A program made the position numbers and the translations under genes. A model generated the notes under the pieces. It did no database searches. It saw nothing but the letters and a program-made list of their open reading frames with translations, and was not told where the DNA came from. Below are positions 35,301 to 55,572 of a stretch of 64,000 bases of DNA, piece by piece. Within the stretch, counting starts at the first letter, position 1, and every line of letters begins with the position of its first letter. The stretch is from Lytechinus pictus (Eukaryota). The stretch covers positions 806,001 through 870,000 of the forward strand of contig NC_087258.1 in the NCBI RefSeq assembly GCF_037042905.1, read 5' to 3'.

Positions 35301-36234
35301 CTGCAAAAAAATCAAATGAATAAACTGTTTCAGTACTCGTGGTACACGTAAACGGGGATACGATAAATACCAATAAAGATTCAGTGCTCCTGTTTAATAA
35401 TGAACATTACCATTGGCAAGTCAGTTAATAACATGAAATCAATTATTTTTATTATTGAGATGGAAGATAATTGTCGGTGCGTCTCTAATTTTAATTGATG
35501 ACATCTTCCCAAATTGTACGAGATTCAGGAAATCAAATCCTGAATCTGATTGTGAGGTTTATCAAACTTTTGCTCCCGAAATGATTTATTTTTTTCTTCT
35601 TCTTTTTTGCAAAGTACAGTACATTCGAATCGCGGAGAATCGGAAGATATTTGATTTTTGTAAGGGGATATGATTAATCAAATCACAACAGCAGAATATC
35701 AGCCATATTAAAAATAGGGTTTGAGCGGCGGCATATACTAAATTATCCTTGGGTTGGAAATAATAATGACAACTTTCAAAGAGTTTACAGGTTTGTTATT
35801 TTCTTGAAGATGTTATACCTTGCTTACAGATTGACAATCCAGCGGTTGTCTTTTTTTTAATCATATTTGCCTGACCCCATGCCGATGCAAAAATAAAATC
35901 CCATGCCACTTCAAATCACGCAGAGCCCGATTCGCAATTTCCGTTGTTAAATGACTGAAAATCAAATCTCTGTTATTATCATACTTCTTTGTCCTACAAA
36001 CTATCCCTTCTTTGCCCCTCCCCCTTCTCTCTCTCTCTCTCTCTCTCTTTCTCTTTCATTCTGCTCTGCAGTCTTAAATGTCACTTCTGTTTCATTATTA
36101 CATGATTCATGCACTTCCTTTCAAATGATTTCTAAATTAAAATGAGAAAAGCTCTTGCGAGTTTTATCATTAGTTCTTTTTTTACAGCGCACTTAAAGAT
36201 GATGAACATGCAATACAAAAATTGAAATTCCTAC

Positions 36235-36635: not shown

Positions 36636-36796
36636 CTCAGTCACATTTACTCTACGGCGGCCGTATGGCGAGTTGAAAACAGCCGTTTTATTCATTTATA
36701 TTCAAACCACCTACATTTGTTTCTGGTACAAAAAAAAAGATTAAAACGGCTGATTTTTACTCGCCGTATGGCCACCGTAGAGCAAATTTGACTGAG
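36636..36796. mobile_element. Short palindromic MITE
   Basis: CTCAGTCACATTTACTCTACGGCGGCC.TA.GGCGAGT ... ACTCGCCGTATGGCCACCGTAGAGCAAATTTGACTGAG. Confidence 0.65.
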
Positions 36797-38495: not shown

Positions 38496-38591
38496 GACCT
38501 TCAAAATGTAGCTTCATCCCATCATCCCGACCACCCCCAGCCCCTTCTCGCTACGGATATAAACCACTTTATTGAGTGTTATGTAACGTAA

Positions 38592-38870
38592 AGGTCAAGT
38601 CCACCCCGAAAAAATGTTGATCTGAATAGATAAATCAAACTAGCATAACGCTGAAAATTTCATTGAAATCGGATGTAAAATAAGAAATTTATGACATTCT
38701 AAAGTTTCGCTTATTTTTCACAAAACAGTGATATGCACGATTCAGTGACATGCAAATGAGAGAGTCGATGATGTCCTTCACTCACTTTTTATTTAGTTTT
38801 TTATTGTTTGAATTATACAATATTTCATTTTTAACATATTTGACAATAAGGACCAACTTGATTGAACCAT
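38592..38870. mobile_element. Left half of the Kolobok/T2-like MITE interrupted by the Polinton
   Basis: AGGTCAAGTCCACCCC start, co-linear with 23187-23460 up to GACAATAAGGACCAACTTGATTGAACCAT. Confidence 0.85.
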
Positions 38871-39401
38871 AGAGAAAGAGGAAGTCCAAGTAAGTGCACA
38901 ATGGGCAAATTAGCATAACAATGGAATATGACGTAATAGTTAATTTGCATAACAATGGAGGGTATGAATGGCAAGATGACATCACACGATGAATATTCAT
39001 GAGTAGAACAAAAGAAGGGTATCGTGGATAAACAAAGGGAACAATGGGAGACCTCCTAGTCCAAGTAGGTGCACAATAGAGGTTTTAATGAATATGCATG
39101 AGCAGTCGAAAATCAAAGTAAGTGCACAATAGAGGGTCTCATGAATATGCATGAGCGGTCGAAAATCAAAGTAAGTGCACAATAGAGGGTCTAATGAATA
39201 TGCATGCGACAGGGTTGGTGACATGTCCAGGGTATGTTTCCTAGCAACAAGATAAACAAAAACCCAGCAACAAGGTAAACAAAATTGATTGGATGTATTT
39301 TTAACCCATTTCTATTGTTTGAAGGTTAAAATTAGAAACGGGGACGGATGAAACAATAAGAAAACTTGAATAGTAGCCTGAGAACGGAAAAACATAGCAA
39401 C
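38871..39401 (+). repeat. Left terminal inverted repeat (531 bp)
   Basis: Starts AGAGAAAGAGGAAGTCCAAG and is the reverse complement of 54635-55271. Contains about 2.6 copies of a 53-bp unit (GTGCAC at 39069, 39122, 39175). Confidence 0.95.
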
Positions 39402-39736
39402 AACTTAAAAATATGTAAAAGTTGCCCCTATTCTTACATTACTGGTACCTACATAGTCCAATAGATAAGAAAGTCTGGTTATGAACTGTATCCTTTCATG
39501 CTTGCAGCAAACAGTACTTCAAGAGAGGGGTCGATGATGTTGAGATGACTCTGTATTGACCAAAGAGATTATTTCCGCCCATCAATATTTTTGTATTCGG
39601 AGTTCACTCTGTATTGATCGAATAGATTAGTTCCCTCCATTCATACATGGGCGAAGGGAAATGACCGTAACCAATCTTCTCTTACATGTATAACATGTAT
39701 TTCAATCATTGCAATGTAAGTTGTTTGATATTTGTC

Positions 39737-39948
39737 AAGGGGGTCCAGTGCCTAGTAACAAGGGCTGTGTATTGACGATGGTTCAGTCGAGAAGCTGTTT
39801 GTTAGTTGCCAAGGGGGTCAACTGCCTAGTAACAGGGGCTATATATTGTCGAGGCATTACTCGAGATAGTCACATTCTTCAGGATAACTGTAGAGACAAG
39901 TGAGCTCCATCTATCGTATCAAGCCGTATCTACTTTTTGACACTTGCA
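39737..39948 (+). promoter_or_regulatory. Putative pPolB promoter and 5' non-coding exon
   Basis: Two 30-bp direct repeats (39737-39766, 39811-39840) directly followed by TATATATT (39840-39847). Donor GCA|GTAAGT at 39949 pairs with acceptor CTATTTCAG at 40184, 6 nt before ACC-ATG-G. Confidence 0.45.
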
Positions 39949-40190
39949 GTAAGTAGGAAATTTACTTTTCTATCTTAAATTACCGATTACTATTTGAAAC
40001 AAACTATTTAGAGTCGATTTATTATATGACACTGTTTTAAATATTCTATGCATAACATGATTTAACCCGAGAAGATGGAATTCTGTAAATGGATGTTACT
40101 TGTATCGATATGTTATTCATAAATGTTTAGGCCATGTCATCTGCATTTCTAAATTCTAAAACAAAATATATATGTCTATTTCAGAAGACC

Positions 40191-43100
40191 ATGGCTAGTC
40201 AGTGGACATCTCAGGATGAACATCAATATATTCAAGCTAGGCAAGTACTTGCCAGCTTGGAGGAGCGACGCAAACGACACCAGGCAAGGAGGGCCAATGA
40301 AAGGGCGGAATTGCTAGATGCAAGACGCGGAATTTCATCCGTTCGGTCCTCGCCTTCTTTGACCACGGAGGAGTATCCCGTTATCCCTGAAACTCCCGAT
40401 GACGAGGAGGAATATCCTGTCATTCCTGAAACCCCTTCTGAAATGGTAAGTTTATCATCTTTTAATATTTGAGTCAGTGTATATAGGAACAGAAAAAGAT
40501 AAAGCTTGAACAATAAACACAAGTGTTGATGTAACCAGTCTGACTTGTATGTTGTTATTTTTTCTTTACTTCTACGTTACAGATGGTGTCTGAAAGCCCT
40601 ACAAGGGATGAAGAGGAACGCATGGAATCCGAAATAGATCCCTCAGATTCTGAAATGGTACGTCCCTATCCTTGCTATTGTATACCCGTTTTTTTAAACT
40701 ATTTTGGGAAAAAAATATTTTAAAAATGTATGCAATAGATATGTAAGCTTTATCATTATAATCTAATAGCGTTTTATTCTTTTTTCATTTATACAATTTA
40801 GATTTTGCCAGATAGTAGTCGGGATCTGTTTGACTCTCAGAAAAGCAGCGCTCTCGATTCGAATACTCTCGAAAGTGAAAACAGCAAAGCCCCTGAATCG
40901 GATAACGTGGCCTCCGAAGAAGTAAGTAATTTCAATCTTTAAATATGACGTTACCTAATGAAGCAATGCTGGAGAATATCAAATGACTTAAAATAAGAGT
41001 ATCTAATATGCTTACTCTAATTCCACTTTCTTCTTTTTTTTGTGTGTGTATGCATATCCACAGGTAAACATGGAACATTTTTACGATGTTGTGGAGGAGC
41101 AAGAAAGAGATGCACCCCGCTTCGGAGGACGCGTGACGGATTTTAACATCGTCGTGAGGCCGTTGCATCGGCTTGTTGAGGAGATGGGCTCCCTCGAAGT
41201 TATAGGTAGATTATTTTCTAGCATTATTTCACGTCTAACCGAGGGTTTCTTGAACGGTGATCTTGTAGGTTTCATTCTGTCAGGTTCCAATTTACGTCAG
41301 GATGTAGGCATTCCTCTGACTCGATATGATCAACTATCAGTCGATCGAATTTTAGCTTTGTTGGAGCAAATTTTACAATCCAACGAAGATTTTAACATCT
41401 CGGAAGGATTCAAAATACGTTTAGTTCATATTCGTATGCCGCAAGGAGGTAAGGGATCGGAAAATATGATTCCCCTTGACAAATTCATTCGCAAAAAGGG
41501 TAGATTTATCCAAATTACAAACAAAGATGAGCTTTGCCTAGGTAGAGCACTGGTAGTAGCCATGGCACATGCTCATAAAGAGGAGGATCCTGCTAATTTT
41601 CATCAAATCACTCACCCTAAAAAATACACGACCCAATTTGATGCGGCAAAACAACTCTTTATAGACTCTAACGTACCGGAGGGTGTTTGTGGAATCCCAG
41701 AAATAGAAAAATTTCAAAATATCCTGACAGAGCGAGGGTACCAGATTGCCGTCTATGTCAATGGTGGAGCCCACGGCAGGATATATGCCGGACCACCCAA
41801 TAGGCATTTTCTTTCTTTATTCTATCACAACAATCACTTCGATGTCATCACTAAGATGCCAGCATTTCTTCGCAAATCATATTTCTGTAATACCTGTCTA
41901 AAGGGATACGATATGAAGGCCAAGCATAAGTGCAAAGATACATGCAGTGCCTGTAAGAGTGAGACAAATTGTGTATTGATTAAAAGAACAATGTGTGAAC
42001 GATGTGGGCGTGTGTTCAAAAGTCAAGAATGTTTCGACAACCATCTTAAACAGGTAAGTGGTAATAAGAGTGTATGTCGGTTATTCTTCAAATGTAAACA
42101 GTGCAATGTAATGTTAGATAGCACCCGCGGCAGTGACAAGACCCATGATTGTAGGTTCGGGTATTGTGAACGATGTCGTACTACAGTATCAAAGGAGGGT
42201 CATCAATGCTTTATGATTCCTCTGCCCAAGAAAAAGAAGAACAAAGCAAAAAATCAGGAAGAGAGGAAGAAAGGAGACGATACCCAAAAGTTTATTTTCT
42301 ACGACTTTGAATGTCGTCAAGATGACAAAGTCGATGAAAATGATCACGGTTCAGTCTTTAAACATGTACCCAATCTTTGTGTAGCAATAAGAGTGTGCGG
42401 GCAGTGTTTTGACAAACAAGATGCATGCCCTGATTGTGGGGTACGTGAACATGTTTTTAGGGGGAAAGACACGTTGGACAAGTTTGGGGAATGGTTATTT
42501 GGCATAGAGGAAGATCACAGGGGGGTCATTGCCATTGCTCACAATGCTCGATCCTACGATTCACAATTCATTCAGGAGTATTGTCTAAAGTCGGGGGTGG
42601 TACCTCAAGTCATCATGAGTGGTGCTAAAATTCTATCACTCACTTTAAATGATGTAAAATGTATAGACTCACTTAGTTTTCTTGCCATGCCATTGTCTTC
42701 TTTTCCTTCAACCTTTCAACTGAAGGAATTGAAAAAAGGGTTCTTTCCTCACTTTTTCAATACCCTCGAAAACCAAGATCATGACGGACCGACCTTGCCA
42801 CCTAAAAAATATTACGATCCAGATGGGATGTCAACAGAAAAACGCGACGAGTTTGATGTTTGGTATGCGCACCATCAAAACGACAATTTTAACCTTCAAA
42901 GAGAATTACTAGAGTATTGTCGTTCTGATGTCCAAATTCTGATGGAAGGTTGCATGGCTTTCAGACGTCTCTTTATGAGCGTCACGGATAACATCGACCC
43001 CTTCCATAACATAACGATTGCCTCAGCCTGCAATACTGTATTTCGGACGCAATTTTTGAAGCGAAATTCCATAGGTCTCATCCCTGTCCAAGGATACAGA

Positions 43101-44897
43101 CATAAAGATCGACACTCAATCATTGCCTTGAAATGGCTCGAATGGGTTAGTCATAACGAGGGAATTCAAATAGAGCATGCGCGTAACGGTGGTGAACATC
43201 GAATCGGCAACTACAAAGTGGATGGTTACGATTCAGCAACGCGGACTTGTTATGAATTTTTAGGGGATATTTGGCATGGGTGTCCACGCTGCTACAAAAG
43301 GCGTGATTTGCTTGTTCCTGGTTCCAGTACCACCGTTCAGGAGGTATACGACCAGACAATGTATAGAATAAATGCATTGAAGAAACAGGGATATCGCGTC
43401 ATCACGATGTGGGAGTGTGACTTTGCAAAATTAAGACGCGAAAACAAGACGCTACAGACGTTTTTGGAAAAACTACAGTTTCGGGATCCTCTCAATCCTC
43501 GGCATGCTTTTTACGGAGGGAGGACAAACGCGGTGAAATTGAGTCATAGAATTCAGGGTAATGAGAGAATCAAATATGTAGATGTTTGTAGTCTTTATCC
43601 TTGGGTTTGCAAGTACGGTAAATATCCCCTGGGTCATCCCGACATTATCACAAAGGATTTCGAGGATATTCAGCGCTATTTTGGATTGGTGAAATGTAAA
43701 GTCTACCCACCTCGACAACTATTTCACCCTGTTCTCCCATACAGGAATGAGGAGAATAAGCTTCTCTTTCCTTTGTGTCGCACATGCGCCAACGAAAAGC
43801 AAACTTCAAAATGTACGCATAGCGACGAGGAAAGGGCCCTTGAATCTACGTGGGTTACGGAGGAAGTAAAGAAGGCAATAGAATTGGGGTACAAGGTTGT
43901 AGAACTGTTCGAAGTGTGGCATTATCCTCACTTTGACCAATACAATCCTCGAACCCAGGAAGGAGGACTCTTCAGGGATTACATAGATCTGTTTTTGAAA
44001 GTCAAACAGGAATCAAGCGGATGGCCCTCCGAATGTCATTCCCATGACGACGAGGTGTCCGCCGATATACAAAAAAAGCGCGCAAATTATGTGAGACAAT
44101 ATCATGAAAGAGAAGGTGTGCTCTTAGACCCTTTAAAAATCAAAGCCAATAAAGGACTTAGGGCTGTGAGCAAGATTTGTCTTAACAGCTTTTGGGGCAA
44201 GTTTGGGCAGCGGAATAATCTTCCAAAGACAGTCTATACGGTGGAACCTGAAGAATTCTTCTCACTGGTGTCGGACCCCAAATTGATCATTAAATATGTC
44301 GACTTCCCTACTTCGTATATGGCGCACGTGCAATATGTTGAGGAGGATGACTTTTTAGAAGTCCTCCCCAACACAAATGTGGTAGTGGCTGCCTTCACCA
44401 CGTGTTGGGCTCGTCTGAAGCTCTATTCGTACCTCGAAGAGCTTCAGAAGAATGTGCTGTATTTTGATACAGATTCTATCATATACCTCAAGAATGATGA
44501 AGTAGAAGATGTCCCCACTGGGAATTTCTTGGGTGATATGACGGATGAATTAGAAAAAGATTTTGGGGTGGGTAGTTATATTACGGAACTTCAGGCCTTG
44601 GGACCAAAAAACTACAGCTACCAGGTTTTCTCAACCAAGCATGGAAAAGAAATGCCCGGAGCTTGCAAAGTACGTGGTATCACGCTAAATTATAGAAATG
44701 CAAAGCTGGTCAATTTCGACACACTCAACGAGCTCGTGCATGGTGAACGCACTCACACCACCGTTACAAATGCGCATAGAATCGCGAGGATGCGTACCCA
44801 CAATATTGTATCCCGCGTGGAAAATAAAATCCATCGTATGGTATATGATAAGAGGGTACGTCTATCCGATTTTAACACTGTTCCATATGGGTATTAA
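40191..44897 (+). CDS. polB: Protein-primed family B DNA polymerase (pPolB), spliced, about 1427 aa, with vOTU-like protease, Zn fingers, 3'-5' exonuclease and a Vsr-like insertion
   Basis: Motifs FYDFEC (ExoI), AHNARSYD (ExoII), YCRSDV (ExoIII), YVDVCSLYP (A), KICLNSFWGKFGQ (B), YFDTDS (C). Exons 40191-40445, 40583-40657, 40802-40921 and 41064-44897 are joined by phase-0 GT-AG introns. The identity is secure, while the upstream exons are predicted. Confidence 0.95.
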
Positions 44898-45732
44898 GAT
44901 ACATATGTTGTATTTCTACCATTGATACTCTTTACCTTCTAACATTCTATATTTGCATTGTATCTCACCTCCAAATTTTCCTATGTTATATTTAATTCAC
45001 GCGCTACAAAGAATACTTTATAAATCAAATATTTTTATGCCAAATTTTGTGTCATATTATTGCAAGCACTCGGTGCTACCTGATGATTGATGTAGTGTAT
45101 AAACGATAATATTTCAGTGTATGATAATTGCTCTTTGTTTACTTAGTTATGTAAAGGATTTCAGAATGGTGCAATATATATATATACTAAGAAAATTCTT
45201 GCCATTTAATTTGTTCGTACTTCTGCGAGTGTGTGTGTGTGTTTGCATGTTTAGAACGAGAGAGAGAGAGGGTTTTTCAATCGTATCCCTTATTCGCCTT
45301 CGGTTAGACGTGAACTATTGTAGGGAAAATAATCCACCACCCTCAATTTGAACGACGATGTATATGTATATTGTTATATGTAATCAAGATATATATTTTT
45401 TATATCCTGTGCTTATACATTATATATTTGACTTTTCAAAATGTCTGAAAATAAATACGAAAACAAATCACATTCATTGTTATCGATCGTCTCTTTTTAT
45501 TGTAATGTGTGCATAAAAAGGAGTGTGTATGACACGATAAGCGAGAGAGCATGAGGGAGGTCTTTTCGCCGATGTTTGATAAGCAATAAGTATGTTATAG
45601 GTAAATGCTATAAAACAAAAATAAAAAAAAATAAAAAGTACGAGATGTATAAAAGAACCGCAAAAAATCAGAGAGACTGAATGTACATGTATAAAGGAGA
45701 GTGATTCTGACAAGTTGGAGGCATTTGGTGGG

Positions 45733-46371
45733 ATGGACGTTCGCCTGAAACATCCATTTACAGCTCTCATAGCAGGACCGACGGGGTGCGGTAAAACTCA
45801 ATTTGTGAGGAAACTCCTCAAACATCATGAAAAATTGGTGGATAAACCTTTTGATAAAGTCATTTGGTGTTATGGGGAATATCAGGTGGGTTATGCTGAT
45901 ATGGCGAGGGATATGCCATTCATTGAATTTCAGGAAGGTATTCCCTCGGATTTGGAAGGGATATTTGACCGCAGGAACTCTAATCTAATCGTTCTGGATG
46001 ATTTAATGTCCCAGGCAAATCAGGATCAAAGGGTGTCGCACCTTTTCACTAAAGGTAGTCATCATCGCAACCTTTCCGTTATTTTAATAAGCCAGAACCT
46101 ATTTCATCAGGGAAAAGAAAGTAGAACCATCAGTCTCAATGCCCACTACATGATCTTGTTCAAAAATCCACGCGACTCTTCTCAGATTGTCCACTTGGCA
46201 AAACAAATTTACCCGCAAAATGGAAAATTTCTGCAAGAAGCCTATAAAGATGCAACGGGTCGACCTCATGGCTATCTCCTCGTAGACCTCAAACCAGACA
46301 CGGATGAAAAATTACGGTTAAGAAGTAATATTTTCCCTGGAGAAAGAAATGTGGTGTATGTCATGAAATAA
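45733..46371 (+). CDS. A32/FtsK-like DNA packaging ATPase
   Basis: Walker A GPTGCGKT, Walker B LIVLDD, and GSHHRNLSVILISQNLF. TATAAA boxes at 45648 and 45690. Confidence 0.95.
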   Translation: MDVRLKHPFTALIAGPTGCGKTQFVRKLLKHHEKLVDKPFDKVIWCYGEYQVGYADMARDMPFIEFQEGIPSDLEGIFDRRNSNLIVLDDLMSQANQDQRVSHLFTKGSHHRNLSVILISQNLFHQGKESRTISLNAHYMILFKNPRDSSQIVHLAKQIYPQNGKFLQEAYKDATGRPHGYLLVDLKPDTDEKLRLRSNIFPGERNVVYVMK

Positions 46372-46464
46372 CTGTGTTTGCCCTATAAAGAGGTTGGGCA
46401 AAATGGAATGGTCATCAGTTGACATATAAATACATTTGCGAAAGCAACAACAGACTCATTCGGC

Positions 46465-46785
46465 ATGTCTCGCCGTGTAAAGAGCAACATTCCATACCTG
46501 CGCGTCTTGGCTAGGGGAACCCCGGCACAAAGAAAAGGTGTACTGCAAGGTGCTAAAAAGGATTTGATTGAAACAATTTGTGAATGCGCACTTAATATCC
46601 TTCACGGCACTGTTCCTTTGTCTGTTGTGGAAAAAAATAAACTTCGTCAGCATAAGCACAAGTTGAGAAGCCTTTGTAATAAAAAGATCTCTCTTCAAAA
46701 AAAGAAAAAGAAGCTGGTAAACCAGAGAGGTGGATTTTTACCATTTTTGATTGCCCCAATCCTGGCTAAAATATTCAGATCGTAG
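46465..46785 (+). CDS. Small basic Polinton virion/core protein with an adenovirus pX-like C-terminus
   Basis: ICECALNILHGTVPL block, Lys run, then QRGG|FLPFLIAPILAKIF (protease-site-like motif plus amphipathic helix). Lies in the structural gene block. Confidence 0.8.
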   Translation: MSRRVKSNIPYLRVLARGTPAQRKGVLQGAKKDLIETICECALNILHGTVPLSVVEKNKLRQHKHKLRSLCNKKISLQKKKKKLVNQRGGFLPFLIAPILAKIFRS

Positions 46786-46805
46786 AAAAAAGGATAGCGA
46801 CCACC

Positions 46806-47594
46806 ATGCAGTACGCCAAAAAAATGGTGCTGGTACCCCACGAAACCGTTCAGCATGTTAACGCTTCGCACGAGCATGGAGTAGCTCCTACCTTTAAAGG
46901 TCTTGCCGGATTAGACGAGCAAATGCAGACTATTTTACGCAGGCAGGACATTCCAGAGGATGAAAGAGTGAAACTCTATCAGCAAGCCCTCATGGGGTAC
47001 ATCAACCTACATCACAAACTCAATGAACCGATAGCCCTACAGGTGGAGAATGTACCGGGGAATAATCTTCCTGCGATCACGTCTGCAAAGTCAAACGAAA
47101 AGGCAACGCTTCATACCGCTCCTTCCACCTCCCCCTGGATGCAGCGTGTCAAAGAGAGTGTCCCTAAAACACTGGTCCAGAAAGCAGGGCAAATCATGCA
47201 TCTCCTTCAATCTGCACCTGATCATCGCATAGCTATCAATGACAAGGGAGAAATTTTGTTGGATGGCAAGGCGCTAGAAGGAACGCACATTGTCGACCTA
47301 GTCAATGATATGTTGAGAAAGAGGAAGAGTTTTTCTCCAAAAGGATGGCAAGAATTTGCACGGGTGATGGCTACTCTGCATCCCCCGAGGGAGCTCGTGG
47401 GAAACCAAGATAGATGGAACTTCATGCAACGACAAATTTCTACCGAATCCTTACTTCCCCGAACTACAGAATTTCAAGATCACAAACCAGACAACTTGAA
47501 TACCGTGGAGGTGTTTGCTAGAGCGGATCACCTTCCTGCAACGAAAAGAGGTCGACCCAAGAGACAGTCCTCCCCAGACTGGATCCAGTATTGA
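46806..47594 (+). CDS. Conserved Polinton protein (PZ-like), function unknown
   Basis: Blocks AKKMVLVP, LDEQMQTIL...KLYQQAL and NDKGEI..DG...GTHIVDLV...PKGWQEF, recalled from animal Mavericks. Kozak-like CCACCATG. Confidence 0.75.
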   Translation: MQYAKKMVLVPHETVQHVNASHEHGVAPTFKGLAGLDEQMQTILRRQDIPEDERVKLYQQALMGYINLHHKLNEPIALQVENVPGNNLPAITSAKSNEKATLHTAPSTSPWMQRVKESVPKTLVQKAGQIMHLLQSAPDHRIAINDKGEILLDGKALEGTHIVDLVNDMLRKRKSFSPKGWQEFARVMATLHPPRELVGNQDRWNFMQRQISTESLLPRTTEFQDHKPDNLNTVEVFARADHLPATKRGRPKRQSSPDWIQY

Positions 47595-47748
47595 TAAACA
47601 TCGGTATTCAACTTTCTTATTCATTTCATGACACTTCTGTTCTCGAGCAACATGGGATGTTGGCCTCCGTCACTGAGGCTACAGTTGGAACGTGTCCGAT
47701 GTGCCTTGGCTTGCTGCAAAGGAAACATCAATATACACGAATCATCCG

Positions 47749-48819
47749 ATGGAGGACATCCTAAAAAAGGTGTATTACGATCCGGAAAACCCTGCCGGTT
47801 TTGGTGGTGTAGATGCTGTTTACCACGAGCTAAGGAAACAAAACAAAAATATAAAGAGGTCGGACATAAAGGAATGGTTGACAGAACAATCGACTTACAC
47901 ACTTCACAAACCCCTACGGAGAAGGTTTAAACGAAACAGAGTCATCGTCTATGGCATAGATCATCAGTGGCAAGTGGACCTGGTTGATATGCAGGCTCTC
48001 TCGCGACAAAATAAAGGATTCAAATATCTCCTGACCTGTATTGACATATTCTCCAAATATGCTTGGGTTTTACCCCTCAAAGACAAGAAAGCGGCGACCC
48101 TTGTTGAGGGCTTTCAGAAAATCTTGAAAGAAGGCCGAAAGCCATACAAACTACAATCTGATAAAGGAGGGGAATTTATCAACAAACCCTTTCAGCGCAT
48201 GTTGAAAGAAGAAGACATCGTATTCTTTACTACTCAGAACGAAACAAAAGCTAGCGTAGTAGAAAGATTCAACCGAACCCTCAAAGAGAAGATGTTCAAG
48301 TACTTCACCAGTCACAACACACGCAAATACACGAATGTACTGCAAAAGTTTGTTTCGGCTTACAATCGTCGCAAGCACTCGAGTATCGGCCGCCCACCCT
48401 CGGAGGTTAAGGCAACGAATGAGAAGGATGTATGGATGACGTTGTACGCTGACCTACCTAAAAAGGGTTCCAAGGAGGCAAAGTTTCGAATGGGAGATCA
48501 CGTGAGGCTTTCCATAGCAACGCAGGTTTTCAGGAAAGGGTATCTTCCCAAGTGGACGGAAGAGATATTCTCCATCAGCCGACTTATTGGAAGGACACCC
48601 ATCGTCTACAAAGTCAAGGACGCCGGTGGAGAAGAAATTGATGGCACCTTCTACGAACAGGAATTACAAAAAGTCGTCCCTCCGCGAGATGATTTTTACA
48701 AAATAGAAAAAATTCTGCATACTAGGAAGCGAGGAGGTGTGAAAGAATATTTCGTCAAATGGTGGGGCTATCCCGACAAGTTCAACAGTTACGTTACCGA
48801 CCTTAAAACTATTCCATAA
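47749..48819 (+). CDS. int: Retroviral-like (rve) DDE integrase with C-terminal chromodomain
   Basis: WQVDLVD, LQSDKGGEF and VVERFNRTLK form the catalytic triad. YKIEKIL...EYFVKWWGYPDKFNSYV is the chromodomain. Consistent with the 6-bp TSD. Confidence 0.96.
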   Translation: MEDILKKVYYDPENPAGFGGVDAVYHELRKQNKNIKRSDIKEWLTEQSTYTLHKPLRRRFKRNRVIVYGIDHQWQVDLVDMQALSRQNKGFKYLLTCIDIFSKYAWVLPLKDKKAATLVEGFQKILKEGRKPYKLQSDKGGEFINKPFQRMLKEEDIVFFTTQNETKASVVERFNRTLKEKMFKYFTSHNTRKYTNVLQKFVSAYNRRKHSSIGRPPSEVKATNEKDVWMTLYADLPKKGSKEAKFRMGDHVRLSIATQVFRKGYLPKWTEEIFSISRLIGRTPIVYKVKDAGGEEIDGTFYEQELQKVVPPRDDFYKIEKILHTRKRGGVKEYFVKWWGYPDKFNSYVTDLKTIP

Positions 48820-48859
48820 AAGAGATCAACCGAAGGCAACGGGTGTTATTTCACTCACC

Positions 48860-49624
48860 ATGGCTAAGACAACAGCATCCTCGTTTTATGTGACTCTGCC
48901 TAGCAACAGTTCACTCGATGTATTCCCTAGGAATACCCTCTCTTCGTTCAAAGTGAGACTACCTCATACCGTCATACTCGAGGGAATCTGGGAAATGGCG
49001 ATGGTAGAGCTGCACTACCCGAACAGATGGTTTAATTATCATTCTTCCCACTTGAACTCCGGAATTCTATACTCAGGCGATGGTGGAATAAGCTGGGACG
49101 AACATCGCATCCCAAATGGTTACTATGACAACATCAAAGAGCTTCTGATCCTAATTGTCCCGACAGATTTACGTCGTACCATTGAGTTTACATTCAACGA
49201 TTATTCTAGCAAAGTGACCTTTGTCACGCGAGATCCCTTTTACAGGGTAAAAATGACGGGAGGGTTGGCTACCATGTTGGGTTTTGAGGATGGGTCTTCC
49301 ATGGCGGGGCCATTAGAAGCTCCATTACCAGTCGATATGATGTTGTTTCATGGATTATATGTGTATACAGACCTCATTGAACATCAGCTTGTGGGCGATA
49401 CAAGGGCCCCTCTCTTACGAGTTGTGACAGTAAAGGACAGACATGGCAAAGACGTAACTGTCAATTTCGAGGCCCCGCACTATCTACCTATGAACCAGAA
49501 GCTCTTCAATACGATCGAAGTCCATATAAAGGATGACATGGGTCGTAGTATTCCATTCCAGCGTGGGAGAGTCGTTGTTAAACTACATCTGAGGAAGAGA
49601 TCGCCTTCTTTGATTCACGGATAA
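48860..49624 (+). CDS. Minor capsid (penton, single jelly-roll) protein
   Basis: FYVTLPSNSS...NTLSSFKVRLP at the N-terminus and YVYTDLIE.QLVGD..APLLR...IPF..G.V.VKLHLRK at the C-terminus, typical of Polinton pentons. Confidence 0.88.
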   Translation: MAKTTASSFYVTLPSNSSLDVFPRNTLSSFKVRLPHTVILEGIWEMAMVELHYPNRWFNYHSSHLNSGILYSGDGGISWDEHRIPNGYYDNIKELLILIVPTDLRRTIEFTFNDYSSKVTFVTRDPFYRVKMTGGLATMLGFEDGSSMAGPLEAPLPVDMMLFHGLYVYTDLIEHQLVGDTRAPLLRVVTVKDRHGKDVTVNFEAPHYLPMNQKLFNTIEVHIKDDMGRSIPFQRGRVVVKLHLRKRSPSLIHG

Positions 49625-49652
49625 GAGTGTATTTTTACAAGAAAAATTAAAC

Positions 49653-50108
49653 ATGGCGAGCACTGGTTATCTCTCGCCTCAAGTCTACACAGATTATTAC
49701 ACTAGCCAAGTAGGGAATGGTGTACCTGTATTCTCCGGAGGAGTGATGCAACAAGGTTTTGGTATTGGAGGTTTACTAGCCAGAGGACTGCGGGCAGCTA
49801 TGCCCCTTTTGAGAAGAGGAACGCAAGCCGTGGTTAAAAAGCTTGCCTTTAGAAAAGGGGGCAATTCATTGGCTCAGAGAGCTGTCAATGCCGGAATCAA
49901 CTTTGCAGCTGGGGCTTTGTCAGATCATCTTGATAAAAAGATCGGTGTTAGGAGGGCTCCCAAAAGAAAACGCGCTACCCGTCGACGACAGGCAACTGTC
50001 AAGAAAAGGCGAGTTGGGTCTAATAAAAAGGGGAAACGTCCAAAAGCATCCAACAGTCGTCCTGGAGTCGCTGCGAAGGCAAGAGCTCGAGATATTTTTG
50101 ACGCCTGA
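49653..50108 (+). CDS. Small basic core / membrane-active virion protein
   Basis: YTDYYTSQVGNG...MQQGFGIGGLLARGLRAAMPLL followed by an Arg/Lys-rich tail and C-terminal DIF. Located between penton and MCP. Confidence 0.8.
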   Translation: MASTGYLSPQVYTDYYTSQVGNGVPVFSGGVMQQGFGIGGLLARGLRAAMPLLRRGTQAVVKKLAFRKGGNSLAQRAVNAGINFAAGALSDHLDKKIGVRRAPKRKRATRRRQATVKKRRVGSNKKGKRPKASNSRPGVAAKARARDIFDA

Positions 50109-50135
50109 GAATAATCGGGAGAAAATCAAAGTACA

Positions 50136-51470
50136 ATGGCCTTTGTCCATAACGATTCGTGCGAGTGTGTCAAATCAGAGTTGGACCTCTTCAGTATTCC
50201 ACCTACTCAAACCAGTATTGAACAAGGGCAATGGATAGAATACCACCCCCTGGCTCAATTTTCAGACGGAGGACCCATCGAGTTTCACATTTCTGGTTCA
50301 GGAAGCGAATACCTAGATCTCACTCAGACACAGGTCTATGTAAAAGCAAAAGTGGTCCATCAGGATGGTACCAATCTTGTGGACGGAGATCAAGTTGGAC
50401 CGGTAAATCTGTTTCTGCACTCCCTCTTCTCACAAGTGGATGTCAGTTTAAACGATCGAGTGATCACGCCTTCTACACCAACCTACCCCTACAGGGCTAT
50501 GATTGAATCATTGCTTCAATATGGGTCAGAAGCCAAGGAGACCCAGCTGACCTCGGCTCTCTTCTACAAAGATACCGCTGGCTGTATGGATAATCCCAAC
50601 CCTCTAGATAATACCGGAGATGCCAACCAAGGTTTGAAGAAGAGACACGGTTACATCAGATCATCCAACAGTTTTGAGATGACGGGGCCGCTTCACTGCG
50701 ATCTATTCTTTCAACCCAAACACCTATTAAATGGTGTAGATGTACGAGTTAAAATGATCAGAAGCAAGGAAGAATTCTCCCTCATGTCTGCAACACCCGA
50801 TGCTCCCTACAAAGTTGTCATTCAAGATTGCTCCCTCTTTGTTCGGAAGGTTAAAGTTTCCCCCTCTGTGATGATAGGGCATGCAAGAGCGCTGGAAAAG
50901 GGAACAGCTAAATATCCAGTCCGACGTGTGATGTGCAAGGTTCTCTCTGTCCCTCGTGGGGAAATGACGTTACAGCAGGACCATCTTTTCCTGGGACAGA
51001 TTCCACAGCGTCTCGTTGTGGGATGTGTAGATAACAATGCTTTCAGTGGCAGTTATGTTCACAATCCGTTCAACTTTCAACACTTTGACGTCAATTACAT
51101 GTCCCTCTACGTAGATGGAACACAAGTTCCATCCAAACCATTAACTCCTGATTACGGACGTATCGCTGGATCGGCTTCAATCAGAGCTTATCATACCCTC
51201 TTTTCAGGAACGGATAAAATGTTCAGGGATTCTGGAAACGATATCAGTAGGGAGGACTACGATCGTGGATACGCACTCTATGCCTTTGACCTCTCCCCTG
51301 ACTTATCATCGGGTCAGCATTTCAACTTGAAAAAGCAAGGAAATCTGCGCTTGGAGATACATTTCAGGAAGAATCTACCACAGGGAGTGAACATTGTTGT
51401 CTATGCAGAATTTGACAACATCCTAGAAATTGACCGAGCCCGCAACGTCCTGTTTGATTATTCTGTGTAA
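50136..51470 (+). CDS. Double jelly-roll major capsid protein
   Basis: 444 aa. ECVKSELDLF.IPPTQTSI, PIEF.ISG....YLDL, LHSLFSQVDV.LN, YPYRA.IE.LL, NPFNFQHF and LYAFDLSPD motifs of the Polinton MCP. Confidence 0.95.
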   Translation: MAFVHNDSCECVKSELDLFSIPPTQTSIEQGQWIEYHPLAQFSDGGPIEFHISGSGSEYLDLTQTQVYVKAKVVHQDGTNLVDGDQVGPVNLFLHSLFSQVDVSLNDRVITPSTPTYPYRAMIESLLQYGSEAKETQLTSALFYKDTAGCMDNPNPLDNTGDANQGLKKRHGYIRSSNSFEMTGPLHCDLFFQPKHLLNGVDVRVKMIRSKEEFSLMSATPDAPYKVVIQDCSLFVRKVKVSPSVMIGHARALEKGTAKYPVRRVMCKVLSVPRGEMTLQQDHLFLGQIPQRLVVGCVDNNAFSGSYVHNPFNFQHFDVNYMSLYVDGTQVPSKPLTPDYGRIAGSASIRAYHTLFSGTDKMFRDSGNDISREDYDRGYALYAFDLSPDLSSGQHFNLKKQGNLRLEIHFRKNLPQGVNIVVYAEFDNILEIDRARNVLFDYSV

Positions 51471-51472
51471 AT

Positions 51473-52000
51473 ATGTATGCTTCCGATATTGATCGCATCA
51501 TGAGGAATGATACAGCAGTGGGAGGAATCTACGAGGGCGTTTATCCCTCCGATCGATTGATCATGGAAGCAGTGCCCCGACCTTCAGCTTATGTTGTTAA
51601 CCTAGACCCAGCCCATAAACCTGGAAGCCATTGGATCGGTATATTCATGGATAGCTCTGGAAATTCAGATTATTTTGACTCTTATGGAATCCCCCCACCC
51701 CCTGGAAAAATTCGGAAATTCTTACGTCAACATACGGATGGTCGAACCGGATGGAACCGCTTCAAGCTTCAGGGAGACTATTCCACAGTCTGCGGACAGT
51801 ATGTGATATTCTTCTTAACCCAACGTGCCAGGGGTAGAAATATGGATTCTGTCATTCGCAAATTTTCTTTGGATACGGATTTGAACGATCATCTTATCCG
51901 AGATTTTGTCCGAACTAACTATGGTTATGATCAACCGGTACATCAAACACACTTTCTGGATGACCAACTATCAAAGGCTGTTTATCCTTTGTTTCTTTGA
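51473..52000 (+). CDS. Adenain-like (Ulp1/C5 family) cysteine maturation protease
   Basis: VNLDP..KPGSHW (His), YFDSYG (Asp), LQ...STVCGQY (Gln/Cys). Confidence 0.93.
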   Translation: MYASDIDRIMRNDTAVGGIYEGVYPSDRLIMEAVPRPSAYVVNLDPAHKPGSHWIGIFMDSSGNSDYFDSYGIPPPPGKIRKFLRQHTDGRTGWNRFKLQGDYSTVCGQYVIFFLTQRARGRNMDSVIRKFSLDTDLNDHLIRDFVRTNYGYDQPVHQTHFLDDQLSKAVYPLFL

Positions 52001-52053
52001 TTTGTCATACGTATATAACATGTAAATATTGTTGTTTTGCTGTGATGAAAAAA

Positions 52054-52549
52054 AATAAAAATAAAGATGTAAATAGTATTTTCTTTGCTTCCCATGTCTC
52101 CTTATTTTAGTCATCAAAGTGTCTCGTTCTCCGATTTAACGTATACATTGCATACACACAGCCATACTGATACAGCCCAACAAATATTTGCAAACCTTTC
52201 TCGTGTACAAGAAAAGTTTTACAACCTCTTTTTCTTTTAAGCAAAACTTTTTTTCTCTCTCCCCCTCTCTTCTTTTTTATTCTCTCTTACCTCTCTCTCC
52301 TTTCCTCTTTATCCCCCCACCCTCTCTTCATCTTTTTTCATTAGATAAATACAATCCACGCCTAAGAAGTAAGACAAAGACCTTGCTTTACACTTCAATA
52401 ATAACTTTATTACATGTATTTACTCTATTTACATGAATCTTTCAAATAGGCCATTCGCATTTCCATACGATTATCTTACAACATGAATGCATGATAGTCA
52501 AACACTTGCCATAAATATGATCTAGAGATTGAAGATTTTACAGTTTATT
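52054..52549. terminator. Convergent polyadenylation region between the structural block and the right-arm genes
   Basis: Tandem AATAAA on + (52054-52065) followed by a T-rich tract. AATAAA on - at 52549-52544, just past the stop of ORF 52555-53139. Confidence 0.5.
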
Positions 52550-52554
52550 TACAT

Positions 52555-53139
52555 CTAAAAATCAAGACGCTGAGGGGATATAGTATATTCTTCTTCCCCT
52601 TCCTCTTCCTCGGATGTTTCAGAATCATCGTCTAATTTATCGATATACATCTCACGAATATCATCATCAAATGAAGGGGATTCAAATTTCCTATCCTTAA
52701 CATTGTACAGATCTACAATATCCTGGTGCCTAACGCAATCAAAACCGGGGGTTTTCTCATACCATTGCTCATAGGTATTTAGGAAATAGTCCACATCATC
52801 AACATATTTGACAAGGAGTTCCCTTACAAGTGTATTCCACGTACCAGTTGGACAGAGAAAGACATCACTCTGATCTGTTACAATGTGGGCATAAAATACT
52901 TTCCATTCCTTTAACAGTTTTCCTTTATCAATTTTCCTGAATACCTTTACAACCCCTGGTTCAATAAGTTCAGAGATCGTTATATTGTTCCAGTGATAAG
53001 GCATTTTGTAGTTTAGACATGCGTGGTAGGACGATGGATAGTGATGGAGGCAACCGTCGCAATCTGCCTGGCTCGGTATCATCAAGCTGGAGATCTTTCG
53101 GAATAGCTCTACTACTACGAACCCCTCCAGTATCTTCAT
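52555..53139 (-). CDS. Polinton accessory protein with a CxGC-x4-PS-x2-HxC putative metal-binding motif and acidic tail
   Basis: 194-aa ORF containing QADCDGCLHHYPSSYHACL and DDDSETSEEEEGEEE. Splice acceptor TATTCCATTTTAG at 53157 with the frame open to the ATG. Confidence 0.7.
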   Translation of the reverse strand: MKILEGFVVVELFRKISSLMIPSQADCDGCLHHYPSSYHACLNYKMPYHWNNITISELIEPGVVKVFRKIDKGKLLKEWKVFYAHIVTDQSDVFLCPTGTWNTLVRELLVKYVDDVDYFLNTYEQWYEKTPGFDCVRHQDIVDLYNVKDRKFESPSFDDDIREMYIDKLDDDSETSEEEEGEEEYTISPQRLDF

Positions 53140-53266
53140 GAATCGCTTGCCATTTTCTAAAATGGAATAAATATAGAAAGAACATACGCATAGCTATGTG
53201 GGACATGTTACTATAAAGCAATATTGTACGACTACAATATCAAGGATGTGTATGATGGATCAGCGT

Positions 53267-54382
53267 CTAAGATTTATTGTTTTGTAACAGCTGAAATCTC
53301 TTCCTATCAATGGCTTTGTGGATGCCCGGTACGGCTGCTGCCAGGTTGAGCCAATTCTCCCTGGTTAGATTTATGCCCTTCCGTCCAGCCATCATGCGGG
53401 TCCCATGGTGACCAATATTATAGTACTCTCTCACGTTCACGTAGATCTCCTTGTTAAACGTTTTCACCACAGCAAAACGCTTACCCCCTAGAGGAACGGC
53501 GTGGACGTCTTCCGGGAATCCTTCAACTTTTCCGTCGTCATCGACTTTTTTCCTCGGGGCTTCTGAGATACTGGCTGGGATCTCTAGCTTCAGCTGCTTC
53601 CTTGCCTTCTTTGCTGCAGCGTGGTCTTTCTCCGCGATCTCAACGGACTGGAAGGTCAATGAAACGAAAATACAAAATTATGGATATAAAATATAAAAAC
53701 AATAATAGAAAAAATGAATGACCGACCACCCGATTAAACCAAGGTAGCAACTGAAACTCGTTTCCAAGTGAATTCTGTATAACAAAACTCAAATTTCATG
53801 AAACAGACTCTCTATCCTTAATGAACATGTCCGGTTAATATTTGTAATACATGCAGATTAAATATTAAACAATTATAATTTTTGCATGCATACTACCATC
53901 TGGTATATCAACATTATACGTACACCCTCATGGACATATGCATGAGTACAAATATAGTAAATACGACCTTTTTCACACAAACATCATGGCATTACACTTA
54001 CCGTGGATGCTTTCCTCTTATCCGGTGTGGAGACTGGCGTGGGTGTCCCTTCGGGGAAGCGGAAGATGTCTTTAGTGTGGTGGGCAGCTACTGGAGTTGG
54101 GGGTGGGTGCAGACCTGCTGGCATAGAAGGCAGTATAGGTCTCTGCTCCATAGATGGAGGGTGTTGAGACAATCTTGTCACCGTGCTACTGTCTTTGTCT
54201 GATTCCTCTTCTATTGCTGGGGACGGACTTTCCCACTGCGTAACACCCGTCGAAGTGTTAAAATAATATGCCTTGTTCTCTCGCGAACTAAACCCCACCT
54301 GCCATCCCTCTTGCAATTCTTTGGAGGCCAACTTGAGTTCGGCTTCGAATACGCTTCCACAGGCATTTGAAATATCCGTCAT
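53267..54382 (-). CDS. Spliced WW-domain + PC4-like ssDNA-binding fusion protein (about 253 aa)
   Basis: Exon 54382-54002 carries WW (LQEGWQVGFSSRENKAYYFNTSTGVTQWESP) and donor ACG|GTAAGT. Exon 53647-53267 has acceptor TGACCTTCCAG and PC4 (LGGKRFAVVKTFNKEIYVNVREYY...GRKGINLTRENWLNL). Phase 0, in frame. Confidence 0.85.
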
Positions 54383-54472
54383 GGTAGGGTATGATAGAAA
54401 CTGTAACAGAAATCTGGTGACAGCTGCGATACGTGCGGTTGTACAGGTGGTGTGTCGTAAAATGAGGAGAAT

Positions 54473-54612
54473 TTCAAATTTCCCGCTTATATGACTTACT
54501 TCGCGTTGCTACGCAGAGGATCACGTGTTTGACACGACCAATGGGATTGTAAGCATAAGCAACGTCATAAACATTTCCACCAATCGTGTGGAAGAAAACT
54601 GTGGAGCACGTG
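54473..54612 (-). promoter_or_regulatory. Putative promoter of the WW-PC4 gene: TATA + E2F/CDE-CHR, CCAAT and E-boxes
   Basis: Minus strand TATAA-GCGG-GAAA-TTTGAA (54491-54473). CACGTG at 54522 and 54607, CCAAT at 54538 and 54580. Confidence 0.5.
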
Positions 54613-54634
54613 CTTTGCTGTTTGACCAAACAAC

Positions 54635-55271
54635 GTTGCTATGTTTTCCCGTTCTTAAGCAACTATTCAAGTTTTCTTATTGTTTCATCCGTCCCCGTTT
54701 CTAATTTTAACCTTCAAACAATAGAAATGGGTTAAAAATACATCCAATCAATTTTGTTTACCTTGTTGCTGGGTTTTTGTTTATCTTGTTGCTAGGAAAC
54801 ATACCCTGGACATGTCACCAACCCTGTCGCATGCATATTTATTAGACCCTCTATTGTGCACTTACTTTGATTTTCGACCGCTCATGCGTATTCATGAGAC
54901 CCTCTATTGTGCACTTACTTTCATTTTCGACTGCTCATGCATATTCATTAGACCCTCTATTGTGCACTTACTTTCATTTTCGACCGCTCATGCATATTCA
55001 TGAGACCCTCTATTGTGCACTTACTTTGATTTTCGACTGCTCATGCATATTCATTAAAACCTCTATTGTGCACCTACTTGGACTAGGAGGTCTCCCATTG
55101 TTCCCTTTGTTTATCCACGATACCCTTCTTTTGTTCTACTCATGAATATTCATCGTGTGATGTCATCTTGCCATTCATATCCTCCATTGTTATGCAAATT
55201 AACTATTACGTCATATTCCATTGTTATGCTAATTTGCCCATTGTGCACTTACTTGGACTTCCTCTTTCTCT
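54635..55271 (-). repeat. Right terminal inverted repeat (637 bp)
   Basis: Reverse complement of the left TIR plus two extra 53-bp units (106 bp). Ends CTTGGACTTCCTCTTTCTCT. Confidence 0.95.
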
Positions 55272-55572
55272 AACCATAAAGTACTAAATGCTAATTGCAG
55301 AAGTTCAGGGAGGAATTAATCATTGATTCACTCGAAAATAAGAATATTTCATATAATAAAATACACAAGAAATATTGTGAGTGGATGCGTCATCAGTCTC
55401 ATTTGCATACCAACCAGGATGTGCATATAACTGTTTTGTGAAATTAAGCAGAAACTTTCAAATGTAGCTTTCTTATTCTTAAATCCGATTTTGATGAAAT
55501 TCTCAGTTTTAATCTTGTTGGATTTTTTCTCTTTTTATTCAAATCAACTTTTTGTTGGAGTGAACATGTCCT
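55272..55572. mobile_element. Right half of the interrupted Kolobok/T2-like MITE
   Basis: Resumes exactly where the left half stopped (compare 23455-23773) and ends ...TGTCCT-TTAA. Confidence 0.85.

What the first reader, a model, noticed from the sequence alone, without database searches (positions are those of the whole stretch)
38909..38957. Two canonical Sox-Oct composite elements within 90 bp of each terminus
Seen: CATTGTTATGCAAAT (55185-55199) and CATTGTTATGCTAAT (55219-55233), mirrored at 38943-38957 and 38909-38923. A CRE-like TTACGTCA lies between them, and further ACAATGG/AACAAAG HMG-box sites are nearby. Known: CATTGTNATGCAAAT is the canonical SoxB-POU composite motif. Adenovirus ITRs use an Oct-1 site about 40-50 nt from the end to recruit pTP-polymerase, and here the first octamer is at nt 39-46, in the opposite orientation. 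Inference: the TIR is an origin or enhancer licensed by host SoxB + POU factors, which would confine replication or transcription to oocyte, early embryo or stem cells. Two 15-mer matches this close together are unlikely by chance.
Basis: partly seen in the sequence, partly recalled or inferred. Interest (0 to 1): 0.78.

Follow-up and report, generated by a model that had tools for sequence, protein, structure and literature searches.

The report
Sox/POU site cluster in Polinton ends
Both ends of an apparently intact 16.4-kb virus-like Polinton element in a sea-urchin-type genome are packed, far beyond chance, with DNA words that match binding sites of the host's early-embryo regulators (Sox, POU/Oct and a bZIP-type site), which suggests but does not prove that the element is switched on by those host factors.

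Summary
CATTGTTATGCAAAT and CATTGTTATGCTAAT lie at nt 73-87 and 39-53 from each end of a 16,401-bp Polinton/Maverick element (38871-55271; 6-bp target duplication AACCAT; arms 525/531 identical). The first is an exact match, the second a one-mismatch match, to a published SoxOct search string. The finding understates the pattern: each arm also holds 4-6 matches to the published POU-homodimer (MORE) string, 5 same-orientation Sox cores and two bZIP-like words. These are the only stretches of the window with all three site types. In 20,000 shuffles of the non-redundant arm none had both a SoxOct (one mismatch allowed) and an exact MORE match. The two composite sites share only the motif (14/15 identical; flanks 8/30), so they are not a plain duplication. 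The host is echinoid-like, and in sea urchins maternal SoxB1, Oct1/2 and a bZIP factor jointly switch on nodal at about the 32-cell stage. No element protein shows an HMG, POU or bZIP domain. My best reading is that the arms are host-factor-dependent enhancer/promoter regions for two inward-facing gene blocks. An adenovirus-like replication role is possible but untested.

The parts
38865..38870 (.). Left copy of the 6-bp target-site duplication AACCAT
38871..55271 (+). Whole Polinton/Maverick-type element, 16,401 bp, starts AGAGAA and ends with its complement; GC 41.5%
55272..55277 (.). Right copy of the target-site duplication AACCAT
38871..39401 (+). Left terminal inverted repeat, 531 nt
   Evidence: 525/531 identical to the right arm
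54635..55271 (-). Right terminal inverted repeat, 637 nt (two extra 53-bp units)
38888..38904 (+). Terminal copy of 'box A' (AAGTAAGTGCACAATGG, nt 18-34). The same word opens every 53-bp unit. It holds a Sox-like core and a GTAAGT splice-donor-like word
38909..38923 (-). SoxOct composite site 1 (CATTGTTATGCTAAT), nt 39-53, one mismatch to the published string
38929..38936 (+). bZIP/CRE-like word TGACGTAA between the two composite sites
   Evidence: consensus letters not verified from a held paper
38943..38957 (-). SoxOct composite site 2 (CATTGTTATGCAAAT), nt 73-87, exact match to the published string
38977..38984 (+). Second bZIP/AP-1-like word TGACATCA
38989..39000 (.). MORE-type POU-dimer string (ATGAATATTCAT), exact match, nt 119-130
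39063..39206 (+). 53-bp subterminal tandem repeat, 2.7 copies. Each unit is box A + 8 nt + an exact MORE string (39088-39099, 39141-39152, 39194-39205)
54830..55079 (-). 53-bp subterminal tandem repeat of the right arm, 4.7 copies. MORE strings are exact at 54937, 54990 and 55043, and have one mismatch at 54831 and 54884
55142..55153 (.). MORE-type string, mirror of 38989-39000
55185..55199 (+). SoxOct composite site 2, right arm (exact)
55206..55213 (+). TTACGTCA, mirror of the bZIP/CRE-like word
55219..55233 (+). SoxOct composite site 1, right arm (one mismatch)
39840..39846 (+). TATA-like word inside the 74-bp tandem repeat (39718-39866), followed by GTAAGT at 39949-39954. Possible core promoter and leader exon of the plus-strand gene block (inferred)
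54486..54491 (-). TATA-like word about 109 nt upstream of the first minus-strand ATG and about 144 nt inside the right arm (inferred core promoter)
41040..44897 (+). Protein-primed type-B DNA polymerase, uninterrupted frame (first ATG 41070)
   Evidence: (PF03175, E 1.2e-40)
45715..46371 (+). A32/IVa2-like packaging ATPase
   Evidence: Pox_A32 29.7 bits, Adeno_IVa2 23.1 bits, both above cut-off
47692..48819 (+). rve integrase with C-terminal chromodomain
50136..51470 (+). Double-jelly-roll major capsid protein, 444 aa, full length against relatives
51473..52000 (+). Possible adenovirus-type protease (weak, below cut-off)
   Evidence: Peptidase_C5 E 0.11
53267..53659 (-). PC4/Sub1-like single-strand-DNA-binding / coactivator domain. 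There is no ATG ahead of the domain in this frame, so it is a downstream exon or an incomplete gene
53984..54382 (-). WW-domain protein, first gene inside the right arm
   Evidence: PF00397, E 8.9e-10
46806..50108 (+). Three unannotated uninterrupted frames (46806-47594, 48860-49624, 49653-50108) interleaved with the integrase. Candidates for the minor capsid and other conserved Polinton proteins
   Evidence: no significant match

Best explanation
The two 15-mers belong to a dense, oriented cluster of host transcription-factor recognition words that fills the outer ~340 nt of both terminal inverted repeats of a young, apparently intact Polinton/Maverick element in an echinoid-type genome. Each arm has two zero-spacing Sox+octamer composites, four to six POU-homodimer (MORE) strings, five or more Sox cores in one orientation, and two bZIP-like words. 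I think each arm most likely works as an upstream enhancer/promoter region for the gene block that begins just inside it: the plus-strand block from the left arm and the minus-strand block from the right arm. It would be read by host POU (Oct1/2-type), SoxB and bZIP factors. In sea urchins these are broadly distributed maternal and early activators, so the element would be expressed in oocytes and early embryos, where new copies can be inherited. Shown here: the sequence matches, their non-random concentration, the gene geometry, the host lineage, and the lack of any matching DNA-binding domain in the element's own proteins. Inferred: binding by host factors, enhancer activity and stage specificity.
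For: The strings are literature-defined and were not tuned here: SoxOct CWTTSTHATGCAAAT and MORE ATGMATATKCAT, with the half-sites and zero spacing described. SoxOct is exact at 38943/55185 and has one mismatch at 38909/55219. All 8 exact MORE matches in the 64-kb window lie in the arms. The arms take the 12 top places of about 1,270 windows for Sox + octamer + MORE words and are the only windows holding all three. In 20,000 shuffles of the non-redundant arm, SoxOct was exact in 2, MORE exact in 6, and a SoxOct match (one mismatch allowed) together with an exact MORE in 0. The two composites are 14/15 identical in the core and 8/30 in the flanks, so the motif itself is what is kept. The Sox cores all point the same way. 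The two gene blocks converge and each starts at an arm, with TATA-like words 144 nt (right) and about 440 nt (left) inside the arms. Host lineage: the capsid protein's nearest named relatives are echinoids at 84-85% identity, falling off through other echinoderms; a flanking protein's only named relative is from S. purpuratus. Sea-urchin nodal is activated at about the 32-cell stage by broadly distributed SoxB1, bZIP and Oct1/2. [quoted passage not shown] The related mavirus provirophage is documented to be silent until a trans factor recognises a promoter motif it carries. No HMG, POU, homeodomain or bZIP domain was found in any element frame.
Against: There is no binding, accessibility or transcript evidence. 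Conservation in related elements was not examined, so a lineage-specific accident kept by arm homogenisation is not excluded. The arm copies and the 53-bp units are not independent; effectively there are two SoxOct sites and two MORE types. The search strings come from mammalian ChIP-seq, and echinoids lack a class-V POU. MORE and octamer sites are also used by ubiquitous somatic POU factors, so stage restriction does not follow. The first plus-strand ATG frame lies about 730 nt inside the left arm, and the TATA-like words are only consensus-level matches. Four element proteins remain unannotated and could bind DNA.
Confidence: 0.5

Rival explanations
1. The cluster is chiefly an auxiliary replication origin. 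Host POU (and Sox/bZIP) proteins bound within the first ~130 nt would help to position the element's protein-primed polymerase at the terminus, as NFI and NFIII/Oct-1 do in the adenovirus inverted terminal repeat.
For: The element encodes a protein-primed type-B polymerase. It ends in a short reiterated AG unit like the (AG)3-type end motifs of vertebrate Mavericks. An octamer lies at nt 39-46. Human adenoviruses use host NF-I and NF-III/Oct-1 as part of the replication complex, and reference titles say that ITR elements also promote bidirectional transcription, so the two roles need not exclude each other. The PC4-like protein could act as a single-strand-DNA-binding protein.
Against: No replication intermediates or free ends were observed. 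The positional parallel with adenovirus rests on recollection and was not verified (fetching barred). A composite with Sox plus an array of MORE sites out to nt ~335 (nt ~440 in the longer right arm) extends well beyond the short terminal stretch that, from my own knowledge, adenovirus origins occupy.
Confidence: 0.15
2. The repeated words are binding sites for the element's own proteins (integrase, terminal/priming protein, packaging ATPase or an unannotated protein). They would serve as integration, replication or packaging signals, and their likeness to POU and Sox sites would be incidental.
For: Box A recurs at nt 18 and at the head of every 53-bp unit in one orientation, like the subterminal binding-site arrays of many transposons. 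The 53-bp units lie at nt ~190-350 next to the terminus, a place where, from my own knowledge, adenovirus carries repeated packaging signals, and the element has an IVa2/A32-like ATPase. Four frames are unannotated.
Against: This reading does not explain an exact and a near-exact match to a 15-nt composite of two unrelated host-factor sites plus exact 12-nt MORE matches (none of 20,000 shuffles had a SoxOct match, one mismatch allowed, together with an exact MORE). No sequence-specific DNA-binding domain was detected in the element's proteins. From established knowledge, rve integrases recognise only the extreme ends.
Confidence: 0.2
3. The motifs have no function. They are chance products of an AT-rich, internally repeated arm, multiplied by tandem duplication and arm homogenisation.
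Against: The shuffle tests on the non-redundant arm, the window-wide ranking, motif-only similarity between the two composites and uniform Sox orientation all argue against it.
Confidence: 0.05

Closest known systems
Adenovirus inverted terminal repeat with host NFI and NFIII/Oct-1 sites
   Same: A linear-type dsDNA element with a protein-primed polymerase, inverted terminal repeats and a host POU-factor site close to the terminus. The ITR is reported to serve both replication and bidirectional transcription.
   Different: Here the octamers are fused to Sox half-sites and followed by an array of POU-dimer strings. The element is integrated, carries an integrase and has 531-637-nt arms. No replication evidence exists, and position and orientation were not compared because that virus could not be fetched.
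Terminal repeats of mammalian endogenous retroviruses that carry OCT4/SOX2 sites (Kunarso et al. 2010, cited in PMC8097293; details from my own knowledge)
   Same: A mobile element's terminal repeat carries sites for early-embryo Sox/POU factors, which favours expression where new copies are heritable.
   Different: Those are retroelements in mammals that use a class-V POU. This is a DNA virus-like element in an echinoderm-type host, which has only other POU classes.
Integrated mavirus virophage
   Same: A relative of Polintons with long, near-identical TIRs (615/616 bp, 99.7%) and 5-6-bp TSDs. Its genes are silent until a trans factor recognises a motif carried by the element.
   Different: The mavirus motif sits in individual gene promoters and is read by a giant-virus factor. 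Here the words are concentrated in the arms and match host-factor sites.
Sea-urchin nodal proximal (R2) cis-regulatory module
   Same: It combines Sox, Oct and bZIP sites and is read by broadly distributed maternal SoxB1, Oct1/2 and a bZIP factor from about the 32-cell stage.
   Different: It is a host developmental gene module, and its site letters and spacing were not available to compare.
Intact Mavericks of vertebrates
   Same: 6-bp TSD, AG-type end motif, about 16-17 kb, TIRs of hundreds of bp, and the same core genes. The zebrafish class is enriched in pre-ZGA and zygotic transcripts.
   Different: No transcription-factor content of their arms is described in the papers I could read. This element adds PC4-like and WW-domain genes.

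Membership tests
Polinton/Maverick element | Protein-primed type-B DNA polymerase | tested here: met
   PF03175, E 1.2e-40, in a 1285-aa uninterrupted frame
Polinton/Maverick element | Retrovirus-like (rve) integrase | tested here: met
   PF00665 E 8e-12, plus a chromodomain
Polinton/Maverick element | Double-jelly-roll major capsid protein | tested here: met
   model pTM 0.72; best fold matches are the Sputnik, PBCV-1, iridovirus and mavirus major capsid proteins, E down to 2.7e-15. Sequence search of the PDB was blank
Polinton/Maverick element | A32/FtsK-type packaging ATPase | tested here: met
   Pox_A32 29.7 bits (cut-off 22.8); Adeno_IVa2 23.1 bits (cut-off 21)
Polinton/Maverick element | Adenovirus-type cysteine protease | tested here: inconclusive
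   Peptidase_C5 E 0.11, 12.6 bits, below the 21.3 cut-off
Polinton/Maverick element | Minor (penton) capsid protein | tested here: inconclusive
   candidate frames have no significant match; no fold test was run
Polinton/Maverick element | Terminal inverted repeats, 6-bp target-site duplication, AG-type ends, 15-20 kb | tested here: met
   reference values
Canonical SoxOct composite element | Sox half-site directly abutting an octamer in the canonical order (published search string) | tested here: met
   exact at 38943/55185, one mismatch at 38909/55219
Canonical SoxOct composite element | Cooperative binding by a SoxB-type HMG domain and a POU domain | not testable with these tools
   No binding data. 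The literature shows only that a SoxB/POU3 partnership on this element may be old in animals
Canonical SoxOct composite element | Host expresses the two factors together at a relevant stage | not testable with these tools
   Literature for sea urchins in general: maternal, broadly distributed SoxB1 and Oct1/2. The host species of this window was not identified
Canonical SoxOct composite element | Conserved in related elements | not tested
   The step was left out: DNA of related animal virus-like elements was not fetched
MORE (palindromic POU homodimer site) | Match to the published 12-nt string | tested here: met
   8 exact matches, all in the arms; 1.71 expected in the whole window at up to 1 mismatch
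MORE (palindromic POU homodimer site) | POU homodimer binding | not testable with these tools
   none
Adenovirus-type origin with host-factor auxiliary region | Protein-primed polymerase and short reiterated unit at the very ends | tested here: met
   family end motifs
Adenovirus-type origin with host-factor auxiliary region | Octamer at the same distance and orientation as in adenovirus | not tested
   The window site at nt 39-46 is shown. The comparator could not be fetched and the papers were not held
Adenovirus-type origin with host-factor auxiliary region | Covalently attached terminal protein, free linear genomes, stimulation of initiation by the host factor | not testable with these tools
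   none

The most novel reading that the evidence does not exclude
Animal Polintons use the ancient SoxB-POU partnership as a licence. A composite Sox+octamer module and POU-dimer array in the terminal repeats would act both as an early-embryo/germline enhancer and as the host-factor part of a protein-primed origin. In that case the Oct-1 dependence of adenovirus origins would be an inherited Polinton-type trait and not a separate invention.
Probability: 0.12. Interest if true: 0.8.

Novelty: new variant of a known kind. Interest (0 to 1): 0.55.

Why it matters
How Polintons/Mavericks are expressed and where they replicate in animals is essentially unknown. A terminal repeat built from recognition words of maternal and early-zygotic host factors would give a concrete mechanism for germline-directed activity, checkable in public data. 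It would extend a principle known from mammalian retroviral LTRs to a DNA virus-like element in an invertebrate deuterostome. It would also offer a possible evolutionary link to the host-factor sites in adenovirus terminal repeats. Sea urchins already have stage-resolved transcript and chromatin-accessibility resources, so the idea can be checked by description alone.

Tried and rejected
Chance was rejected by shuffles and by the window-wide ranking. A plain local duplication of the two composites was rejected because their flanks are at chance identity. An element-encoded HMG/POU/bZIP factor was not found by Pfam at lax thresholds or by PDB sequence searches. An Rfam scan of the window found nothing. 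A PDB sequence search with a capsid profile was blank; the fold search then resolved it. Column variation among the eight 53-bp units is too low, and the copies too dependent, to show constraint. Papers with the nodal site letters and the adenovirus origin positions were not held, so the CRE consensus and the adenovirus position stay unverified. One literature query failed on syntax. Literature searches found no paper linking Polinton/Maverick arms with POU or Sox sites, but the library is limited. The inverted symmetry of the flanks is not a longer TIR: it is a separate interspersed repeat family.

Full report
WHAT IS THERE. The finding's letters and coordinates are all correct. They lie in the terminal inverted repeats of a 16,401-bp element at 38871-55271. 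The element begins AGAGAA, ends with the complement, and is flanked by a perfect 6-bp target-site duplication, AACCAT (38865-38870 and 55272-55277). The left arm is 531 nt and the right arm 637 nt. They are identical at 525 of 531 aligned positions, and the right arm carries two extra copies of a 53-bp subterminal repeat.

THE ELEMENT. It encodes a protein-primed type-B polymerase (PF03175, E 1.2e-40), an A32/IVa2-like packaging ATPase and an rve integrase with a chromodomain. It also encodes a 444-aa protein whose model (pTM 0.72) matches double-jelly-roll major capsid proteins of Sputnik, PBCV-1, an iridovirus and mavirus, with E down to 2.7e-15. There is a weak protease candidate, a WW-domain protein and a PC4/Sub1-like protein. 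All thirteen frames I examined are uninterrupted: I counted no stops or frameshifts. The exception is that the PC4-like frame has no ATG ahead of its domain, so it is either a downstream exon or incomplete. I searched that frame and the upstream WW frame separately by reference and left out the joined step. By its defining features this is a Polinton/Maverick (reference values), and it is young, given the near-identical arms and intact duplication.

HOST. The capsid protein's nearest named relatives are in Lytechinus (84-85% identity). After those come Diadema, sea cucumbers, a starfish, crinoids, a hemichordate and corals. A flanking frame outside the element has only one named relative, from Strongylocentrotus purpuratus. 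The host is therefore echinoid-like, and the element counts as a virus-like element of an animal.

THE MOTIFS, TESTED AGAINST PUBLISHED STRINGS. PMC11564870 describes the canonical SoxOct element as a Sox half-site abutting the octamer ATGCAAAT, and it also uses ATGCTAAT as a consensus octamer. [quoted passage not shown] The inner site (nt 73-87) matches SoxOct exactly and the outer site (nt 39-53) has one mismatch. The finding missed that the arms also hold every exact MORE match in the window. These are at nt 119-130 and once in each 53-bp unit, giving four on the left, and four exact plus two one-mismatch on the right. Five strict Sox cores in the left arm all point the same way, as do seven ACAATRG words. 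TGACGTAA lies between the two composites and TGACATCA follows them. I could not verify the CRE consensus from a held paper.

IS IT MORE THAN CHANCE? Yes. The arms take the top twelve of about 1,270 overlapping 300-nt windows for Sox, octamer and MORE words, and they are the only windows with all three. I collapsed the tandem units and made 20,000 dinucleotide-preserving shuffles. An exact SoxOct string appeared in 2, a match with up to one mismatch in 38, an exact MORE in 6, and a SoxOct match (one mismatch allowed) together with an exact MORE in none. The mirror copies are automatic and the 53-bp units are not independent. The independent evidence is therefore two SoxOct sites and two MORE types. 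The two composites are identical at 14 of 15 positions but only 8 of 30 in the adjoining 15 nt on each side. What they share is the motif, not a duplicated block.

HOW IT MOST LIKELY WORKS. The genes form two converging blocks: plus strand from about 40134 to 52000, and minus strand from 54382 to 52555. Each block starts at an arm. TATA-like words lie 144 nt inside the right arm, about 109 nt before the first ATG, and about 440 nt inside the left arm, followed by a splice-donor-like GTAAGT. No element protein shows an HMG, POU, homeodomain or bZIP domain. In sea urchins nodal is switched on at about the 32-cell stage by broadly distributed SoxB1, a bZIP factor and Oct1/2, and its proximal module holds Sox, Oct and bZIP sites. 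Zebrafish Mavericks/Polintons are enriched in pre-ZGA and zygotic transcripts. The related mavirus provirophage stays silent until a trans factor recognises a motif it carries. I therefore commit, at about 0.5, to the arms being host-factor-dependent enhancer/promoter regions. The sequence facts, geometry and host lineage are shown; binding, activity and stage specificity are inferred.

RIVALS. (a) An adenovirus-like auxiliary origin (0.15). The polymerase, the reiterated AG end and the octamer at nt 39-46 fit, and adenoviruses do use NF-I and NF-III/Oct-1. The positional parallel is unverified, however, and the array seems to reach further in than an origin would need. (b) Sites for the element's own proteins, for example packaging or replication iterons (0.2). 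Box A at nt 18 and at the head of each unit looks like such an array, but this does not explain the exact matches to host composite strings. (c) No function (0.05).

WHAT I LEFT OUT, AND A SLIP. I therefore fetched no DNA of related elements, adintoviruses or adenovirus.

NOVELTY. The element is an ordinary new member of the Polintons. The Sox/POU/bZIP architecture of its arms is a new variant of known principles: host-factor sites in viral terminal repeats, and early-embryo factor sites in retroviral LTRs. I found no paper that describes it for Polintons, within a limited library.

Noticed in passing
38582-38825 and 55336-55582; also 8350-8583 / 9110-8954 and 23183-23405 / 23776-23536: The element sits near the centre of two inverted copies (189/233 identical) of a ~245-bp interspersed repeat. 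In this window the repeat family tends to occur as inverted pairs (a foldback-type element), and each copy carries its own ATGCAAAT octamer.
   Followed up: partly
38888-38904, 39116-39130, 39169-39183 and mirrors: Box A (AAGTAAGTGCACAAT) contains a consensus-looking 5' splice-donor word GTAAGT pointing inward. The same word recurs just inside both arms (39949-39954; near 54494-54499 on the minus strand). It might mark leader exons or capture of read-through host transcripts.
   Followed up: no
39063-39206 vs 54830-55079: The 53-bp unit is present in three copies on the left and five on the right, so the arms differ by an exact 106-nt copy-number change despite about 99% identity elsewhere.
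   Followed up: yes
53267-53659 (-) and 53984-54382 (-): There are two accessory genes next to the right arm: a WW-domain protein and a PC4/Sub1-like protein. The PC4-like frame has no ATG before its domain, so the two may be exons of one spliced gene. They were searched separately only.
   Followed up: partly
39718-39866: A 74-bp tandem repeat (2 copies, 80% matches) between the left arm and the first gene. Its second copy contains a TATA-like word; the first has a variant.
   Followed up: no
28657-35373 (-): A single uninterrupted 2,238-aa frame with only a sub-threshold DUF7610 match. It may be a very large host exon or an unclassified mobile element.
   Followed up: no
11679-13229 (-) and 13571-15574 (-): Two adjacent long frames without Pfam domains. 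The second has only three relatives in 5.8 billion proteins, about 40% identical, one from S. purpuratus.
   Followed up: partly
36636-36702 / 36730-36796: A 67-nt inverted repeat, 82% complementary, with a 27-nt loop: a hairpin-like small element upstream of the insertion.
   Followed up: no
59498-59654: A run of N (assembly gap or masked). It was left as it is.
   Followed up: no
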